From the NCBI RefSeq assembly GCF_006345805.1, contig NW_021834592.1, forward strand, positions 1-58,980: a stretch of 58,980 nucleotides of DNA, in the 5' to 3' direction. The DNA comes from Octopus sinensis (Eukaryota). Positions 1,184-45,439 of this stretch are shown here, one piece after another. The translations under genes were made by a program, and so were the position numbers. The notes below the pieces were generated by a model. It searched no databases. It was not told the DNA's origin and saw only the letters and a program-made list of their open reading frames with translations. Positions within the stretch are counted from its first letter, which is position 1. Each line of letters starts with the position of its first letter.

Positions 1184-1255
1184 AGACTTGTTAAACTGGA
1201 AAGATTTCGGAAGGTTCCTACTTTGATATTCTTAATTTTATTATCGTACAACTTC
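1184..1255 (-). CDS. LRR exon e20
   Basis: cag|G...CT|gtaagt; KLYDNKIKNIKVGTFRNLSSLTS(L). Confidence 0.9.
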
Positions 1256-1467
1256 CTGAAACATAACATTGAGTGAAGAACATTTATTGAACAAATTTGT
1301 GTCTAAAGAATTGGATGATGGAAAAGCTGAAAAGTAGATTACTATCAAGATGAACTTCATAATGATTTTGGAGATAAAATTGGGTGGATTAAGGGCAGTG
1401 ATGAGTATGATGATGTGGAAGTGGAGAAGAAATGTCACCCGGAAAAGTCGGGGAGGAGCAGAGGAGG

Positions 1468-2645
1468 TTGGATGTGGCAAATGCGTTCATCGCGGTCGTC
1501 ATTTACGTACCGTTCGTCTACTACCCGTTGACCGTCGTGTTTTGCGCCCTCTCGCGCATCGCCAAGCTGGTGCAAATCCTCTTCACATTCTTGTGCAGAG
1601 GTATGGTTGGTGAGGCGTTCATCCGCTGCCAGCAACCTCTATGTTAGATATTAGGCATGCCGTGGCTTATGATGAGTAGACATGCGCTGAGGATGCGGTA
1701 TATCCAGATATTGAGCCTAAACGTTGAACAGGTGTAATCTCTTTTTGACATAGATGTACTTTCCCAGCTCCTCTCCTTAAATGAGTTGCAGTCCTAGGTG
1801 AAGAAGAAGCCCAGTACCCTTTTCCATTACCATCTTCCAGGTGAGAAAATCTGTCAGTGGAGTATCAACGCTTGAATTCTGAACAGGGTTACTGGTGGAA
1901 AAATTACGATGAAGCACATCAGGGAATTCGAACTGAGCAGTCTGATTCAGAAGACTTTTGTGCCGGGGACCATGGATAACTTCCAGAAATCCCTCCCTTT
2001 CCAGTACTACCAGCAGGGGACACTACAGGTCCGTGATAAACTCTACAGGTGCGGAAGTGGTCTCACCCATACTTGCCCTAGTTGTAGGTAGAGCGACAAA
2101 ACCGTACTGCAAACACTCGTTCAGTGTCATGCATTACTCACATTTGGGGTTATGTCGAACAGTTGTTGCTGAGTTTAGTATGAGTGAGGTAAACGGCCGA
2201 GTCCATAGTGAAGATTGAACCACCGACTTCTTTGGCCAAGAAGAGCAGGGAATTCTCAGATTTCACTTGGAAAGGAAGATGAGGCTATACAAAGAATAAA
2301 TGCTACCCCGTGCATTTGCTGAAATGTGTGTGAATGAAGCGAAATGACCTGCGTGGGTGGACCTACTCAAATAATGCGTCTGTATTTTGGTGAATTTGAG
2401 GAGGAGAGGTGCACCGGTTCCCGATCACCATCGAAGCATCGGGTGGTTCAGCATTGGGGATTATCTTAGCCAACCATCGGTGGTCATCACCCCTATTGGG
2501 AAATGTCACTGTAATATTTTTTCTTGTTTCATATATTTTGTTATTGTTTTCGTAACTGTTTAGTTGTTGTTTTTGTAAAATCCCCACTGTCCCCGTCTGC
2601 TGTATTGTCCCCTTTACATCGGCACTAGTAGCCAGAAAATGAAAT
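1468..2645 (+). mobile_element. L1/Tx1-like non-LTR retrotransposon, degenerate 3' part of ORF2 plus 3'UTR
   Basis: Broken frames VANAFIAVVIY..RIAKLVQILFTFLCRG and LQVRDKLYRCG..TCPSC resemble the post-RT and Cys-rich C-terminal regions of L1-clade ORF2. Confidence 0.65.
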
Positions 2646-2657
2646 TATTATTATTAT

Positions 2658-2699
<42 letters not shown>

Positions 2700-3284
2700 C
2701 AGTAGCAGTAGTCGAAGTCGCTATTGTTGTGGTAGAAGAAGAAGGAGGAGGATGTGGTGGTGGATGAGGAGGGGGAGAATGAGAAGTAAAAAGAAATTTT
2801 CGATATAAAAGAAGAAATTTAGGCAGATGCATGTTTCGTGTTTAGGAGTAAATGATAAAGAAATAGAAAAGTTGAAATAAAATTACGCTGAATGGAAATA
2901 ATTAGAACGGAGAGCCATGAATAGTAATCAGCGTTGATCGAGAAATAAATATAATAAATAATATACAAAAAGATATAAAAGTCAAGTCGCTCACTCGTGT
3001 ACTTTCACTCATACAGATAGACACATACACATAGACACACATGTACAAAGATCCTATACATTAATTATCAGAGACTCATACATAAACCTAGACACTGATA
3101 TTCACACATACACATAACGTCTCAGATAGTCACAACGAATACATGTTCCTGTGGAAATTGACCGAGTGTATATAGTGTATATAGTGCGTTAAGAAGAGTG
3201 AGAGAAAAAAGAAAGCATTGAGAGACATTAAATTTTAGAATTATATTGTCAATAAAAGACAACCAAAAGACTAATTAAATTTAC

Positions 3285-3356
3285 AGATTCGTTAAACTGG
3301 GAAGATCCTGAAAAGATGCAGCTTCTAATTCAGTGATTTGATTTTCATACAAATGA
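3285..3356 (-). pseudogene. LRR pseudo-exon (class III), acceptor lost
   Basis: Open LRR frame HLYENQITELEAASFQDLPSLTN and a gtaaat donor, but no AG at the 72-nt position. The nearest AG (3374-3375) would give an 89-nt frameshifting exon. Flanks are paralogous to e18. Confidence 0.75.
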
Positions 3357-3957
3357 AATATAAAGTATAATGCCTAAAAATTTAGGAAAGTGGTGGTGGT
3401 GGTAGTGGTGAGGTTTGTGATGGTGTTGATAGATCTGTTGACATTTCTGAGGACGCTGATGATGGCGATAATATTCATTTTTATGATGATGTTTCTCCTG
3501 GTTGGAAAATAATTGTTTAAGAGTTGGAAGTTTAGAGATTTGTATACATGAGTAACATTGCTTTATAATTACAATTCGAAGATTGATGGTTGGCATTCAA
3601 CGTTGATCCAGAGCTAAAAGCAGTAAATGTTATACAGACATAAATACAAGTTGATACACTAGTATTGAACCATCCATACACGAAACATAAACATATGTGT
3701 ACACATACATAAAATGTGCGGCTTGAACAATCACACACGCGTATGTACTAACACACACACGCCTAAGGACACAAAAATACACACGCACACATTCACATTG
3801 ACAGACATTAAAAAACAATCACATACAGCTGTGGAGGTGGTATGAGAATGCAGAGAGAGAGAGAGAGAGACAGAGAGACAGAGCTATAGAATGGGATGGT
3901 AATTAAAAATTACAAATATGACTGCAGTGAAATACTATCGAGAATGATCCAAATTAC

Positions 3958-42551: not shown

Positions 42552-42623
42552 AGATCTGTTAACCTGGAAAGATTTTGGAAGGTTCCGACATTGATTTCTG
42601 CGATATTATTTCCCTGCAAATTC
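42552..42623 (-). CDS. LRR exon e3
   Basis: cag|G...CT|gtaagt; NLQGNNIAEINVGTFQNLSRLTD(L). Confidence 0.9.
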
Positions 42624-44486
42624 CTGGAGCATAAAATTGAGAAAATTAGAAATTTTATGCAACAAATTTGGCAGAATGTTAAATATAATGGTTAGTTAAT
42701 TAGATGTCGGAAGAGAAGGAGAGTAGATGACGATCATGATGAAATTGATGATGAGAATTGTGATAATGTTGGAGTGGTGATATTGATATAAATGATGATG
42801 AGTAAGAGAAAATATGGAGATAATGCTGATGACGAAGATATTGCGTTTCTGATGATGGGGTGATGTTAACGTTGACTATTTTGATAATGATGGAGGTTAG
42901 CACATCTCTGGTGATGCTGAATACGATACTGATTATAATGATGTTGGTGAGGATGTTAATGTTAGTGAATCTAATAATGATGGGGATTAGCACGTTTACA
43001 GTGGGGATGACAATGTTTGTGGGGATGGTTCTTCGTGGCGATGATGACGGTGTTCATCTGATTGGGGTGTTCTATTATTATGAATGATGTTGATGATGAT
43101 GAGGGCAATGATACACTTGACGGTGTTGATGATACAAATGAAGATGCGAATGGTGACACTGATGTTGGCAAGGAGGAACACGTCGATAAGGATGATGACA
43201 GCGACGAAGATGAGGAAAAAGAAGATGAGAAATATGATGAAGATTGAGAAGTTAAAGATAAAGCAGTTGAATAATAATAAGGGGGTGAGGAGGAGGGGAG
43301 AAGAATGAAAGAAAAAGAAGAATAGAGCAAGAAGTAGAATATGAAGATGACAACGAAGAACTCATTGGTGATGATGATGATGATGATGATGATAAGGTGA
43401 TGGTTATGTTAGTAGTGGTAGTGATGGTGCGGATTGTAAAAGTGAATATTTTGACAACAGAGTCGGCGAGGAAAGCGCTGTAAGTGGTAATAGTGATGAT
43501 GATGTTAATGCTGATTATTGTGGTGATAACAATGAAGGCGTTGTTTGTGTTAATGACATTGATGAGGGTAATTATGGTGATGGTAATGATTTCGCTGATG
43601 AGGTTAAAGGTGGTGACGAGGATTGTAGTGAAGGTGATGATGATGATGAATGTGATGATGATGAGATTGATAACGATGTTGTTGATTGTGATGACTTAGG
43701 TAGGTGATACTGAAGATTATTTCGATAAGAAAAATCAAGAAAGAACAAAGAGCATGGAAAAGAAATCTATGAAAGCAAGAAAAGAAAGAAGCAAAAAAGA
43801 AGAAGAGGAGGAGGAAAAAGAAAAGTTGTCAAAGAAGGAGAAGGAGAGTAGAGGAAGAAGAAGAAGAAAAAGAAAGAGAAAAATTAAAATGTAGAAAAAA
43901 GAAAAGAAGACGACTAAGCAAAGGAGAAAGAGTAGAAGGAGAAAAATCAGGAAGACGAAAATGAGGAGAAGACGGGGAAGAAGAAAACGGAGAGAGATGA
44001 ATGGTAGGGAAGGAATGGGAGAAAAATATGATGGAGGAGGAGGGGAAGTGGAGTGGGATTAAGAAAGGAGGGATGGGAAGAGTGTGAGGAATGGTGAAGA
44101 AGAAAACGAAGAAGTAGAACAACAAGGAAAAGGAGAAAAAAACAAGAGATAGGTGAACAATCAATTGAGGGTGAAAATGGTTATGCTTAACGACAAGATG
44201 ATGAAGAAATAGCAAAGTATAAAATAAATTACTAAGAGTTGGAAAGTATAGCAAAATTAAAACATGAATAATCTAATTCTCAATCGACATTTAGAACGGA
44301 GAACCATGAATGGTAATCAGCGTTGATCGAGAACATAATAAATGATATACAAGAAATATCCAAACACAAGTCGACACTCTCGTCTACCTTCACTCATACT
44401 GAAATATACAGACGTATATACACACACTCAAAATCATACACATTAATTACCAGAATCACATACTTAAATCCACACAATGATATTCA

Positions 44487-44685
44487 GCCGTTCAAGAATT
44501 TGGACATGGAGATCTCCATTTCCAGCGACTTCGAGGGCCACCTCCCAGCGGTGTCGGGCGTCAACGAAGAGACCTCGATTACAACAAGACGACTAAAGTA
44601 TTTTTCCAAGGTCTGGGGTCTACTAAGACCTACACCATTACCTAATCACCCTTACCCGTCTTGTTGCTTAACAACAACAACAACA
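44487..44685 (+). mobile_element. About 200-nt retroposon with (CAA)n tail, copy 2
   Basis: 13-bp TSD acaatgatattca at 44474-44486 and 44686-44698; absent from the paralogous class III units. Confidence 0.8.
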
Positions 44686-44864
44686 ACAATGATATTCACA
44701 CACAGACACACACTTAAACACACACACACACGCACTCACCTTCCCAGACATTCACAAAGAATTACACATTCTGTTTCAAGGAGAGTGAGAGAAAAAAGAA
44801 AGGGTGTAAAGACATTAGAATTATTTTATGAACAAAACAGGTAAAAATAACTAATCCAGCTTAC

Positions 44865-44936
44865 AAAGTCCTTAACTTGGAAAGGGTCTCAAAAGCTCCG
44901 GCTTCAATTTCGTTGATATCATTACTTTCCAAATTT
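44865..44936 (-). CDS. LRR exon e2 (class III)
   Basis: cag|A...TT|gtaagc; NLESNDINEIEAGAFETLSKLRT(L). Confidence 0.88.
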
Positions 44937-45367
44937 CTGTAACAAAAAGTGAGTTGTGAAAAACGTGTGTAGAACAGGATCGTAATAAAATATTAAATAT
45001 AACGCTTTAAAAATTAGGAAAGTAGATGCCGAAGATGATGGTGGAGATGATGATATAGAAGAAGATGATGATTATGGGGAGAGGAGGAAGCTGATCGTGT
45101 GGTGGTAGTGGTAATGATGATATATACTCACCGACTTACACACACATGTTAATACACGCATCTTAACAAACAGACATAGAAATGCATGCACTATAATTTT
45201 CCCCTTAAGTTTCACCGTCTCATATATTCACATTCATAGAAATTCACAAACAATAATACACATCTTTAGAAAGAGGGATGTGGGAGCATGAAATGACGTA
45301 TGGGAAGATATTACAGATTTAGAAATATATCGTCAGTGAAATACTATAAAAGACGGATTCAACTTAC

Positions 45368-45439
45368 AGATTTGTTAAACTGAAAAGATTTTGGAAGGTT
45401 TCTGCTTTGATTACCGCGATTTTATTATCCCGCCCATTC
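45368..45439 (-). CDS. LRR exon e1
   Basis: cag|G...CT|gtaagt; encodes NGRDNKIAVIKAETFQNLFSLTN(L); Gly replaces the consensus Leu, so possibly decaying. Confidence 0.8.

What the first reader, a model, noticed from the sequence alone, without database searches (positions are those of the whole stretch)
1184..45439. Hidden array of 20 intact single-LRR cassette exons: candidate diversified LRR receptor locus
Seen: 20 exons of exactly 72 nt on the minus strand over 44 kb, each one 24-aa LRR with canonical splice sites and no stop, all invisible to the ORF track. All 20 encode different peptides. Established: 72-nt phase-2 one-LRR-per-exon architecture occurs in LGR/RXFP-type receptors and Slit-like genes, so the architecture alone is not new. 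Inference: the exon number, recent amplification as exon+intron units, interspersed dead cassettes and variable binding face together look like a locus built to diversify a recognition surface. It would be conceptually like lamprey VLR cassettes or Dscam exon arrays, but with splice-competent LRR modules.
Basis: partly seen in the sequence, partly recalled or inferred. Interest (0 to 1): 0.9.

Follow-up and report, generated by a model that had tools for sequence, protein, structure and literature searches.

The report
LRR exon array of octopus receptor gene
The 20 tiny exons are real and form the leucine-rich-repeat ectodomain of one member of an octopus-only receptor family linked to adhesion GPCRs; it reads as a normal multi-exon gene, and annotated relatives skip single repeats in their isoform models.

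Summary
There are 20 minus-strand exons of 72 nt, all phase 2, with AG acceptors and GTAAG donors. Spliced in series they give a seamless 479-aa solenoid of 24-residue LRRs, and all 20 peptides differ.

The exons are under constraint. They carry no indels where 12 were expected from their intron flanks (P=5e-6). Framework codons are more conserved than the flanks (p=0.001).

Four decayed cassette remnants also exist. Duplication did occur as exon+intron units, but the copies are only 66-87% identical, so it is not especially recent.

The array is paralogous, down to its intron flanks, to annotated Octopus genes. Those read LRRNT, then LRR cassettes, LRRCT, a Cys-rich domain, SEA-like modules and, in some models, GAIN and 7tm_2. 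This module family was found only in Octopus and probably matches a published octopus-specific adhesion-GPCR expansion.

The window holds neither end of the gene and no transcript evidence.

The 'built to diversify' reading is partly supported, and only indirectly. RefSeq isoform sets of two O. sinensis paralogues, and one O. vulgaris pair, differ by whole 24-aa cassettes. Excess change on the concave face is not significant here (p=0.105). No Dscam-like RNA pairing was found, and nothing resembles VLR cassettes.

Verdict: new member of a known kind, moderately interesting.

The parts
45368..45439 (-). LRR exon E1 (A-type), peptide NGRDNKIAVIKAETFQNLFSLTN; Gly replaces the second framework Leu
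44865..44936 (-). LRR exon E2 (B-like), NLESNDINEIEAGAFETLSKLRT
42552..42623 (-). LRR exon E3 (A-type), NLQGNNIAEINVGTFQNLSRLTD; duplicate of the E4 unit
40521..40592 (-). LRR exon E4 (A-type), NLRDNNIAEINVETFQNLSSLTD
37965..38036 (-). LRR exon E5 (A-type), TLYGNNITEIHAGSFHYLYRLKN
37647..37718 (-). LRR exon E6 (A-type), NLWDNNIQEIKAGTFQNLSSLKT
36263..36334 (-). LRR exon E7 (A-type), DLDRNSIKEIKSGTFQNLSSLTS
31665..31736 (-). LRR exon E8 (B-type), YLQTNNMETIEIRALHDLPRLQK
30178..30249 (-). LRR exon E9 (A-type), YFSYNNIKEIKVGIFQNLSSLKF
28914..28985 (-). LRR exon E10 (A-type), SLSSNQIKEISADTFRNLSNLED
27652..27723 (-). LRR exon E11 (A-type), YLSYNNITEIKAGTFQDLFSLKT
24616..24687 (-). LRR exon E12 (B-type), YLENNNIETIGIRAFRDLPSFTT
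21086..21157 (-). LRR exon E13 (A-type), LLSYNNIKEIQSDAFRNLSRLTY; part of a triplicated A+B unit
20135..20206 (-). LRR exon E14 (B-type), YLEYNNIEKIEARAFHELPSLGY
19806..19877 (-). LRR exon E15 (A-type), FLDYNNIKEIQSGAFRNLPSLTD
18721..18792 (-). LRR exon E16 (B-type), YLEYSHIEKIDGGAFHDLPSLRN
17842..17913 (-). LRR exon E17 (A-type), FLSHNNIKEIPLDTFRNLSSLTD
14919..14990 (-). LRR exon E18 (B-like), ELHKNDIKELDVGAFQDLPGLDT
6687..6758 (-). LRR exon E19 (A-type), ELYENNITNIKAGTFRNLSSLTD
1184..1255 (-). LRR exon E20 (A-type), KLYDNKIKNIKVGTFRNLSSLTS; the last one visible, and the gene probably runs on past position 1
3285..3356 (-). Dead B-type cassette: open frame HLYENQITELEAASFQDLPSLTNL and a gtaaat donor, but no AG acceptor. 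It is a duplicate of the E18 unit (75% over 526 bp).
3958..4029 (-). Dead A-like cassette containing stop codons (…YNGIKKIAGGIF*NLSRLTE)
41615..41720 (-). Decayed cassette unit in intron 3; only the 3' exon edge and downstream flank are recognisable
39861..39979 (-). Decayed cassette unit in intron 4, the counterpart of 41615-41720 in the E3/E4 duplication

Best explanation
The 20 exons are consecutive coding exons of one protein-coding gene on the minus strand. Spliced in series they encode an extracellular horseshoe of about 20 typical 24-residue leucine-rich repeats.

The gene belongs to a family whose non-LRR module was found only in Octopus, and at least some members sit side by side in the genome. 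Annotated members of that family have these parts in order:
- one exon with a signal peptide and LRRNT cap;
- a variable number of 72-nt phase-2 LRR exons of two alternating subtypes;
- an LRRCT cap;
- a Cys-rich domain that looks like Ly6/uPAR by eye;
- one or two SEA-like modules with a motif that looks like a hormone-receptor motif;
- in the fuller models, a GAIN domain and a secretin/adhesion-type seven-helix domain.

The most likely product is therefore a cell-surface LRR receptor, probably the ectodomain of an adhesion-type GPCR.

Shown here: the array grew by unequal-crossover duplication of one- and two-cassette exon+intron units. Selection keeps exon length, frame, splice sites and the hydrophobic framework. 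Surface positions drift at roughly the neutral rate.

Inferred: every intron is phase 2 and every exon is 72 nt, so gain, loss or skipping of any cassette stays in frame. That explains the rapid change in repeat number between paralogues and the cassette-skipping isoform models of relatives. The membrane anchor, the ligand and the tissue are inferred from relatives; the window shows none of them.
For: - Exon set, splice sites and seamless 479-aa LRR product.
- No further intact cassette.
- Closest solved relatives by sequence are extracellular LRR ectodomains (IGFALS, LRRC15, TLR3, LGR4/5).
- Constraint: 47 indels per 1673 nt in the flanks of six sister pairs, 12.1 expected in their exons, 0 observed (P=5e-6). 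A neutral-decay simulation gives P(all 20 intact) between 5e-4 and 2e-10.
- Framework codons are 9.0% divergent against 19.6% for flanks (p=0.001).
- Duplication units.
- Family link: best named hits are Octopus proteins P0003 (52% identity) and P0004 (44%). The window aligns at 65-82% nucleotide identity, intron flanks included, to the O. bimaculoides locus of P0004. That locus has the same 72-nt cassette architecture.
- The P0004 C-terminal module has 35 homologues, all from Octopus. Many are named adhesion GPCR G6-like and two carry 7tm_2.
- Overlapping models join LRR array to GAIN start (P0163) and SEA-like module to GAIN to 7tm_2 (P0141), with 53% identity over the 137 aa they share.
- An O. 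sinensis gene overlapping the P0003 locus on the opposite strand combines LRR_8, GPS and 7tm_2.
- Published context: an octopus-specific, co-localised adhesion-GPCR expansion in which some members carry LRRs. It is expressed in axial nerve cord, suckers and skin (PMC6408891).
Against: - The window contains no LRRNT, LRRCT, GAIN or 7TM exon. Membership of the GPCR family rests on paralogy of the LRR cassettes alone.
- Many family models, including P0004, end without a 7TM. This gene could encode a secreted or differently anchored LRR protein.
- No protein more than 52% identical to the array was found, although three annotated Octopus species are in the database. The locus is therefore either from an unannotated species, unannotated, or unexpressed in the sampled tissues. 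That search scored only the 8000 candidates sharing most words.
- E1 has Gly at a framework Leu position.
Confidence: 0.64

Rival explanations
1. One reading: the locus is built to diversify a recognition surface. Different cells or conditions would include different subsets of the 20 splice-competent LRR cassettes, giving many receptor isoforms from one gene. This would be analogous in purpose to Dscam or clustered protocadherins.
For: - All exons are symmetric (72 nt, phase 2-2), so any subset stays in frame.
- In paralogues, RefSeq models differ only by whole cassettes. One O. sinensis gene has 13 isoforms of 409, 385, 361 or 337 aa that use different subsets of the first roughly five cassettes. 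A second gene has isoforms X3-X9 of 525, 501 or 477 aa. An O. vulgaris pair differs by 24 aa.
- The most variable codons lie on the concave face.
- A published precedent for the idea exists in brown-alga ROCO genes, which have 72-bp phase-2 LRR exons, exon shuffling and splice variants (PMC11378527).
Against: - There is no transcript evidence for this locus.
- The isoforms are computational models. Several contain chimeric cassettes joined inside a repeated motif, which is what template switching or read mis-mapping in repeats produces.
- In-frame skipping escapes nonsense-mediated decay, so it can accumulate as splicing noise.
- The P0004 model uses every cassette that its tblastn map places, in genomic order.
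- All 20 donors are consensus-strength GTAAG, which is more typical of constitutive exons. This last point rests on general knowledge.
- Concave-face excess divergence is not significant (p=0.105).
- No conserved inter-flank RNA pairing was found (mean z +0.5).
Confidence: 0.2
2. The array is an unexpressed or recently silenced pseudogene fragment: a duplicated piece of a neighbouring family member with no cap or anchor exons.
For: - No near-identical protein or transcript-derived ORF was found in the protein collection.
- No 5' cap exon lies within 13.5 kb upstream, a stretch full of transposon and microsatellite sequence.
- Decayed cassettes lie inside the array.
- E1 has a framework Gly.
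Against: - All 20 cassettes keep an exact 72-nt length, an open frame, AG and GTAAG.
- Their flanks accumulated 47 indels per 1673 nt while the exons accumulated none (P=5e-6).
- Framework codons are significantly more conserved than flanks.
- Genuine dead copies are easy to tell apart from the 20.
Confidence: 0.1
3. It is the ectodomain of a conserved bilaterian LRR gene such as an LGR-type class-A GPCR, Slit, a Toll-like receptor or an LRRC15/IGFALS orthologue, as the names attached to database hits suggest.
For: - LGR4/5, TLR3, IGFALS and LRRC15 are the best solved-structure and named matches.
- LGR and glycoprotein-hormone receptors share the one-LRR-per-phase-2-exon layout (PMC11378527).
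Against: - Identity to those proteins is only 26-37%, the generic level for LRRs.
- The much closer Octopus relatives carry an Octopus-only C-terminal module and 7tm_2/GPS. They carry no 7tm_1, TIR or Slit EGF/LamG domains.
- The names given to them (TLR5, slit, decorin, chondroadherin) are inconsistent labels put on a single family.
Confidence: 0.05
4. The cassettes are donor modules for somatic, VLR-like gene assembly.
For: Only the superficial resemblance: many different LRR modules lie together in one locus.
Against: - Every cassette is a complete 24-residue repeat with canonical splice sites and a uniform phase.
- All cassettes lie in one orientation with A and B subtypes alternating in the 3' half, which fits a normal gene.
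- No incomplete germline acceptor gene carrying cap fragments is present.
Confidence: 0.01

Closest known systems
Octopus-only LRR / adhesion-GPCR-linked gene family. RefSeq examples are O. sinensis XP_036355612-623, XP_036369232-238 and XP_036369864, and O. bimaculoides P0004 on CM046629.1. It probably corresponds to the 'group 3' octopus-specific adhesion GPCR expansion of Ritschard et al. 2019 (PMC6408891).
   Same: - One 24-residue LRR per 72-nt phase-2 exon, with GTAAGT donors.
- Two cassette subtypes with distinct acceptor flanks.
- Nucleotide similarity that extends into intron flanks (65-82%).
- Arrays of a similar size: at least 17 intact cassettes lie upstream of the LRRCT in the O. 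bimaculoides locus.
- Dead cassettes lie between live ones.
   Different: - No collinear cassette-by-cassette orthology with the O. bimaculoides locus.
- At most 52% protein identity to any annotated member.
- Cap, module and 7TM exons are not visible in this window.
- Twenty cassettes is more than any annotated model recovered here contains.
- Identity with Ritschard's group 3 is inferred from annotation names and domains. Accession numbers were not compared.
LGR4/5/6 and glycoprotein-hormone / relaxin receptors (class-A LRR GPCRs)
   Same: The LRR ectodomain is encoded as one repeat per exon with phase-2 introns (PMC11378527 citing Koo 1991). LGR4 and LGR5 are among the best solved-structure matches.
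   Different: They have a rhodopsin-type 7tm_1 domain, while the Octopus relatives carry 7tm_2/GPS. They are conserved single-copy genes with fixed repeat numbers, whereas this family is lineage-specific and its repeat number varies between members.
Brown-alga ROCO (LRR-ROC-COR) genes with shuffling LRR exons (Zambounis 2012; PMC11378527)
   Same: The same exon logic: 72-bp phase-2 exons, one LRR each, tandem exon duplication, splice variants that drop cassettes, and variable concave-face residues. The same diversification hypothesis has already been proposed for them.
   Different: They are cytoplasmic ROC-COR GTPases in a different eukaryotic kingdom, so the layout arose independently. Positive selection was demonstrated there and is not significant here.
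Drosophila Dscam1 exon clusters and lamprey VLR cassettes
   Same: Many variant copies of one structural module sit in one locus.
   Different: Dscam variants are mutually exclusive substitutes for one position and depend on docking/selector RNA pairing. Here cassettes add in series, paralogue isoforms vary in length, and no pairing signal was found. VLR cassettes have no splice sites and are assembled in DNA, whereas these are ordinary exons. The statements about Dscam and VLR mechanisms rest on general knowledge.

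Membership tests
Octopus-only LRR / adhesion-GPCR-linked family | Array of 24-residue LRRs, each on a 72-nt phase-2 exon, in two cassette subtypes with distinct acceptor flanks | tested here: met
   for the window; for the O. bimaculoides and O. sinensis members.
Octopus-only LRR / adhesion-GPCR-linked family | Nucleotide-level homology of cassette plus intron flanks to annotated members | tested here: met
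   65-82% identity over 150-1100 bp to L001, including flanks. Best protein hits are Octopus P0003 and P0004.
Octopus-only LRR / adhesion-GPCR-linked family | 5' exon with signal peptide and LRRNT cap | tested here: inconclusive
   Not found anywhere in the window by tblastn or by a Cys-pattern scan. The 13.5 kb upstream of E1 is transposon and microsatellite sequence, so the exon may lie beyond the window.
Octopus-only LRR / adhesion-GPCR-linked family | LRRCT plus Cys-rich (Ly6/uPAR-like by eye) plus SEA-like module downstream of the array | tested here: inconclusive
   No match in the window, but only 1183 bp lie downstream of E20.
Adhesion GPCR (class B2) | GAIN/GPS domain and 7tm_2 seven-helix domain | not testable with these tools
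   Not in the window, and the flanking genome cannot be fetched. In relatives these domains appear only in some models.
LGR-type class-A LRR GPCR | 7tm_1 domain and hinge after the LRR array | not testable with these tools
   Not in the window. The closest Octopus relatives carry 7tm_2 and no 7tm_1, which argues against membership.
Dscam-type mutually exclusive exon cluster | Variants substitute for one another at a single position, enforced by docking/selector RNA pairing | tested here: not met
   Cassettes concatenate into a continuous solenoid. Paralogue isoforms differ in length by steps of 24 aa. Flank-to-flank duplex energies are no better than shuffles (mean z +0.5; only ±120 nt was tested).
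Lamprey VLR-type somatic cassettes | Cassettes without splice sites flanking an incomplete germline gene | tested here: not met
   All 20 have AG and GTAAG and a uniform phase. No cap-bearing incomplete gene is present.
Toll-like receptor / Slit (names attached to homologues) | TIR domain (TLR), or four LRRNT-LRRCT-capped blocks plus EGF/LamG domains (Slit) | tested here: not met
   The homologue named 'TLR5', and the close relatives P0002 and P0003, show only LRR and LRRNT Pfam hits and no TIR. The 'slit'-named models have LRR-family Pfam entries only and read on into the Octopus-only module. The window itself has an uninterrupted 20-LRR run with no internal caps.

The most novel reading that the evidence does not exclude
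In this Octopus-only receptor family, including this 20-cassette gene, regulated combinatorial inclusion of single-LRR exons would give individual neurons or sensory cells distinct ectodomains. That would be a splice-based surface-diversity system next to the expanded octopus protocadherins, reached independently of Dscam and of brown-alga ROCO genes.
Probability: 0.2. Interest if true: 0.8.

Novelty: new member of a known kind. Interest (0 to 1): 0.4.

Why it matters
On its own the window adds one more, unusually long, member to an Octopus-specific LRR receptor family that is already annotated and partly described. Two things go beyond that.

First, current gene models of this family look unreliable. 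They are given inconsistent names, such as TLR5, slit, decorin and chondroadherin. One array continues across two adjacent models, and one N-terminus matches translated intron. Family size and domain content in published counts may therefore be wrong.

Second, isoform models in two species and two annotation sets differ by whole LRR cassettes. If long reads confirm that, octopus would have a splice-diversified LRR surface receptor family expressed, according to the literature, in arm nerve cord, suckers and skin. That bears directly on how a large nervous system without Dscam-style diversity encodes cell identity or contact chemosensation.

Tried and rejected
- My first LRR regular expressions were too strict or misregistered and found nothing useful. 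I replaced them with an unbiased AG|72|GT scan and profile searches.
- Cap or anchor exons in the window: tblastn with three family proteins and with GAIN/7TM-bearing models, plus a Cys-pattern scan, all found nothing.
- Cassette-by-cassette orthology with the O. bimaculoides locus: no collinearity, so the two are paralogues.
- Dscam-like RNA pairing between cassette flanks: the first run timed out. The second gave no signal.
- Diversifying selection: pN/pS ranged from 0.36 to 1.84 in single pairs, which is too noisy to use. The pooled concave-face excess is not significant.
- Species identification from a LINE ORF: best hits were only 65-67% identical. The only hint is a 183-bp segment 95.6% identical to an O. 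sinensis contig.
- Rfam and tRNA scans found nothing.
- Literature: no paper describing LRR cassette arrays or their splicing in cephalopods was found.

Full report

Yes, to the base. I scanned both strands for AG, then 72 nt, then GT, with an open frame when the first base completes a split codon. This gave 70 windows on the minus strand and 58 on the plus strand. Twenty are LRR-like, all on the minus strand. The first is 45368-45439 and the last is 1184-1255.

Every donor is GTAAG (19 GTAAGT, 1 GTAAGC). Every acceptor is YAG behind a pyrimidine tract. Introns run from 246 to 8160 nt.

Joined in genomic order, the exons give 479 residues without a stop. Each junction codon is Leu, or once each Val and Ile, which completes the LxxLxLxxNxI register. 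Pfam LRR_8 scores E=2e-147.

A nucleotide profile of the exons and a protein profile run over all six-frame fragments recover the same 20. They add only one cassette-like open frame, at 3285-3356. All 20 peptides differ; the closest pair shares 19 of 23 residues. No Rfam family or tRNA lies in the window.

**2. Are these live exons or debris?**

They are live, or were until very recently.

- In six sister pairs, the 150-nt intron flanks carry 47 indel events in 1673 aligned nt. At that rate 12.1 indels are expected in the exons, and none is seen (Poisson P=5e-6).
- A substitution-only decay simulation gives P(all 20 keep AG, GT and an open frame) between 5e-4 and 2e-10 for 5-15% divergence.
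- Framework codons (L, N, I, F positions) are 9.0% divergent against 19.6% for flanks (p=0.001). Other codons are at 17.2%, about the flank rate. The five concave-face codons are at 26.7%, which is higher than the flanks but not significantly so (p=0.105).
- Genuine dead copies exist for comparison:
  - 3285-3356 has an open frame and a gtaaat donor but no acceptor AG.
  - About 3958-4029 contains stops.
  - 41615-41720 and 39861-39979 are flank-only remnants.

**3. How did the array arise?**

It arose by tandem duplication of exon+intron units. Self-alignment gives these pairs:

| Pair | Identity | Length |
|---|---|---|
| E17/E15 | 82% | 908 bp |
| E20/E19 | 87% | 564 bp |
| E15/E13 | 86% | 412 bp |
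| E16/E14 | 74% | 423 bp |
| E4/E3 | 71% | 1098 bp |
| dead cassette at 3285 / E18 unit | 75% | 526 bp |

There are two cassette subtypes. A has the form NNIKEI..GTF.NLSSLT.L with acceptor …ttatgttccag. B has the form YLE.NNIE.IE.RAF.DLPSL with acceptor …t(t/a)cag. They alternate strictly from E11 to E20, and an A+B unit of about 1.3-2 kb was triplicated (E13-E18).

The same two-subtype alternation occurs in paralogous genes of O. bimaculoides and O. sinensis. The subtypes therefore predate the gene duplications.

Among A-type cassettes, the first 60 nt of the downstream intron are more alike (0.77-0.81 mean pairwise identity) than the exon itself (0.72). The least conserved codons are LRR positions 3, 5, 7 and 8, followed by 12 and 15.

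**4. What gene is it?**

The array is a generic 'typical' extracellular LRR. By sequence, the best solved relatives are IGFALS, LRRC15, TLR3 and LGR4/5.

The best named database hits are Octopus proteins. P0003 is O. sinensis 'LRRC15-like' at 52% identity. P0004 is O. bimaculoides 'toll-like receptor 5' at 44%. Everything else sits at 25-42%, except two unnamed records: P0002 (49%), whose C-terminal module resembles P0004's, and the short fragment P0107 (39%).

The genomic locus of P0004 (L001, CM046629.1) has the same architecture. It aligns to the window at 65-82% nucleotide identity, including intron flanks. There is no collinear orthology, so the two are paralogues.

After its LRRs, P0004 reads on into an LRRCT-like Cys motif. 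Next comes a Cys-rich domain that ends in a CC…CN motif and looks like Ly6/uPAR to me. Then come two SEA-like modules with a motif like a hormone-receptor motif. These domain names are my reading of the sequence; Pfam finds only the LRRs.

That module has 35 homologues, all from Octopus sinensis, O. vulgaris or O. bimaculoides. Many are named 'adhesion GPCR G6-like', and two carry 7tm_2.

Overlapping models link the parts together:
- P0163 runs from LRRs through the module into a GAIN-like start. The Pfam GAIN hit has E=0.002, below the curated cutoff.
- P0141 runs from the module through the same segment into 7tm_2 (E=1.7e-10).
- The two are 53% identical over the 137 aa they share.
- An O. 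sinensis gene that overlaps the P0003 locus on the opposite strand combines LRR_8, GPS and 7tm_2 in 1088 residues.

Ritschard et al. 2019 described an octopus-specific, co-localised adhesion-GPCR expansion ('group 3'). LRRs were found in 5 of its 22 sequences. It shows signs of positive selection and is expressed in axial nerve cord, suckers and skin (PMC6408891). The present family probably corresponds to it, but I did not match accession numbers.

The window itself contains no cap, module, GAIN or 7TM exon. Several family models also end without a 7TM. The membrane anchor of this particular gene is therefore inferred.

**5. Testing the diversification idea**

*In favour.* The exon symmetry makes any subset in-frame, and annotated relatives show exactly that.
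- One O. sinensis gene has 13 RefSeq isoforms of 409, 385, 361 or 337 aa. They join the LRRNT exon to different subsets of the first roughly five genomic cassettes, while the distal cassettes are constant.
- A second gene has isoforms X3-X9 of 525, 501 or 477 aa with the same behaviour.
- Two adjacent O. vulgaris entries differ by one cassette.

*Against, or cautionary.*
- These are computational models.
- Some isoforms contain chimeric cassettes joined within the shared NNISTIKEG motif. The one genomic copy of that cassette appears frame-shifted. This is the signature of template switching or repeat mis-mapping.
- In-frame skipping escapes nonsense-mediated decay and can be noise.
- The O. 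bimaculoides model P0004 uses every cassette that its tblastn map places, in genomic order, and passes over the one with a broken donor.
- All donors here are consensus-strength.
- There is no significant excess of concave-face change.
- Upstream and downstream cassette flanks show no complementarity beyond shuffles, with mean z of +0.5 for exon-looping pairs and +0.4 for intron-end pairs.
- No protein or transcript-derived ORF close to this array exists in the collection searched. That search scored only the 8000 most word-similar candidates, and the source species is unknown.

*Analogies.* VLR-type somatic assembly is contradicted by the canonical splice sites. Dscam-type mutual exclusivity is contradicted by the length-variable isoforms of paralogues. 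The closest conceptual precedent is the brown-alga ROCO family. It has 72-bp phase-2 LRR exons, exon shuffling and splice variants, and the same hypothesis was raised for it (PMC11378527).

**6. Surroundings**

Introns and the 13.5 kb upstream of E1 hold these features:
- reverse-transcriptase fragments (12762-13493 minus strand, 22696-23094 plus strand);
- a LINE 3' ORF (48746-49312);
- an element bounded by 98% identical direct repeats (49576-50484 and 53189-54093), with internal plus-strand ORFs;
- long (AAG)n, (AAT)n and (AT)n tracts.

Purine excess on the plus strand runs across most of 1-48 kb, weakest near 8-14 kb, and then stops. It tracks the duplicated intron material.

**7. Verdict**

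The thing is the LRR ectodomain array of a new, long member of an Octopus-only receptor family that is already annotated and partly described.

The 'diversified receptor' reading is a reasonable hypothesis with indirect support from paralogue isoform models. It is not shown for this locus, and its VLR and Dscam analogies do not hold mechanistically. Novelty: new member of a known kind. Interest: moderate (0.4). The splice-diversity reading has a probability of about 0.2 and would be of high interest if confirmed by long reads.

Noticed in passing
window 49576-54093 (+): A transposon-like element bounded by 98% identical direct repeats of about 910 bp (49576-50484 and 53189-54093). It has internal plus-strand ORFs at 50525-53135. 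The last ORF contains a YVGASSSRLSLRVSNH motif that looks to me like a GIY-YIG motif of a Penelope-like element, but Pfam gave no hit. A third partial repeat copy lies at 11275-11674.
   Followed up: partly
window, first ~110 nt downstream of each A-type cassette (e.g. 1074-1183, 6577-6686): The downstream intron flank (gtaagttgaatca..cttttatagtatttcattga.gatatatttctaaatctgtaat…) is more conserved among the 14 A-type cassettes than the exon itself (0.77-0.81 against 0.72 identity). This could be co-duplication with faster exon change, or a splicing element. No pairing with upstream flanks was found.
   Followed up: partly
L001 (O. bimaculoides CM046629.1) 1-12518: The RefSeq models look wrong here. 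72-nt LRR cassettes continue across the 183-bp gap between an 805-aa gene model and P0004. The N-terminus of P0004 (…QLFLNSTLCSRS) matches the translated acceptor flank of its first cassette. The two models may therefore be one gene with a much longer array. Family members are named TLR5, slit, decorin, chondroadherin and LRRC15 without consistency.
   Followed up: partly
L002 (O. sinensis VCDQ01004985.1) 28668-28739 and 31667-31738: Two apparently intact cassettes (open frame, AG, GTAAGT) lie between the last cassette used and the LRRCT exon. None of the 13 isoform models uses them.
   Followed up: no
L002 about 11135 and isoforms X2, X4, X7, X8, X13: The YLSENNISTIKEG… cassette seems to be frame-shifted at its 3' end in the genome. 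Several isoforms carry it fused to the back half of other cassettes. These are probably artefactual or 'corrected' models.
   Followed up: partly
window 1-48000: The plus strand shows purine excess across most of the array (2-kb windows reach GC skew +0.52 and AT skew +0.43, weakest near 8-14 kb). It comes from (AAG)n and related tracts, which read as (CTT)n on the sense strand of the introns. GC skew drops to about zero upstream of roughly 48 kb, which roughly marks the edge of the duplicated array.
   Followed up: no
window 5195-5946, 15630-16388 and 91-385: A repeat of about 770 bp is present at 95% identity in introns 19 and 17, with a third copy at 76%. It is low-complexity and Ser/Phe-rich when translated. 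It is either a young interspersed repeat or part of a larger segmental duplication that also copied the E18 unit into intron 19.
   Followed up: no
window 8808-8990: A 183-bp segment is 95.6% identical to O. sinensis contig L002 (5702-5884). The best transposon-like match to the O. bimaculoides locus is only 84%. This is a weak hint that the window comes from the O. sinensis / O. vulgaris lineage.
   Followed up: no
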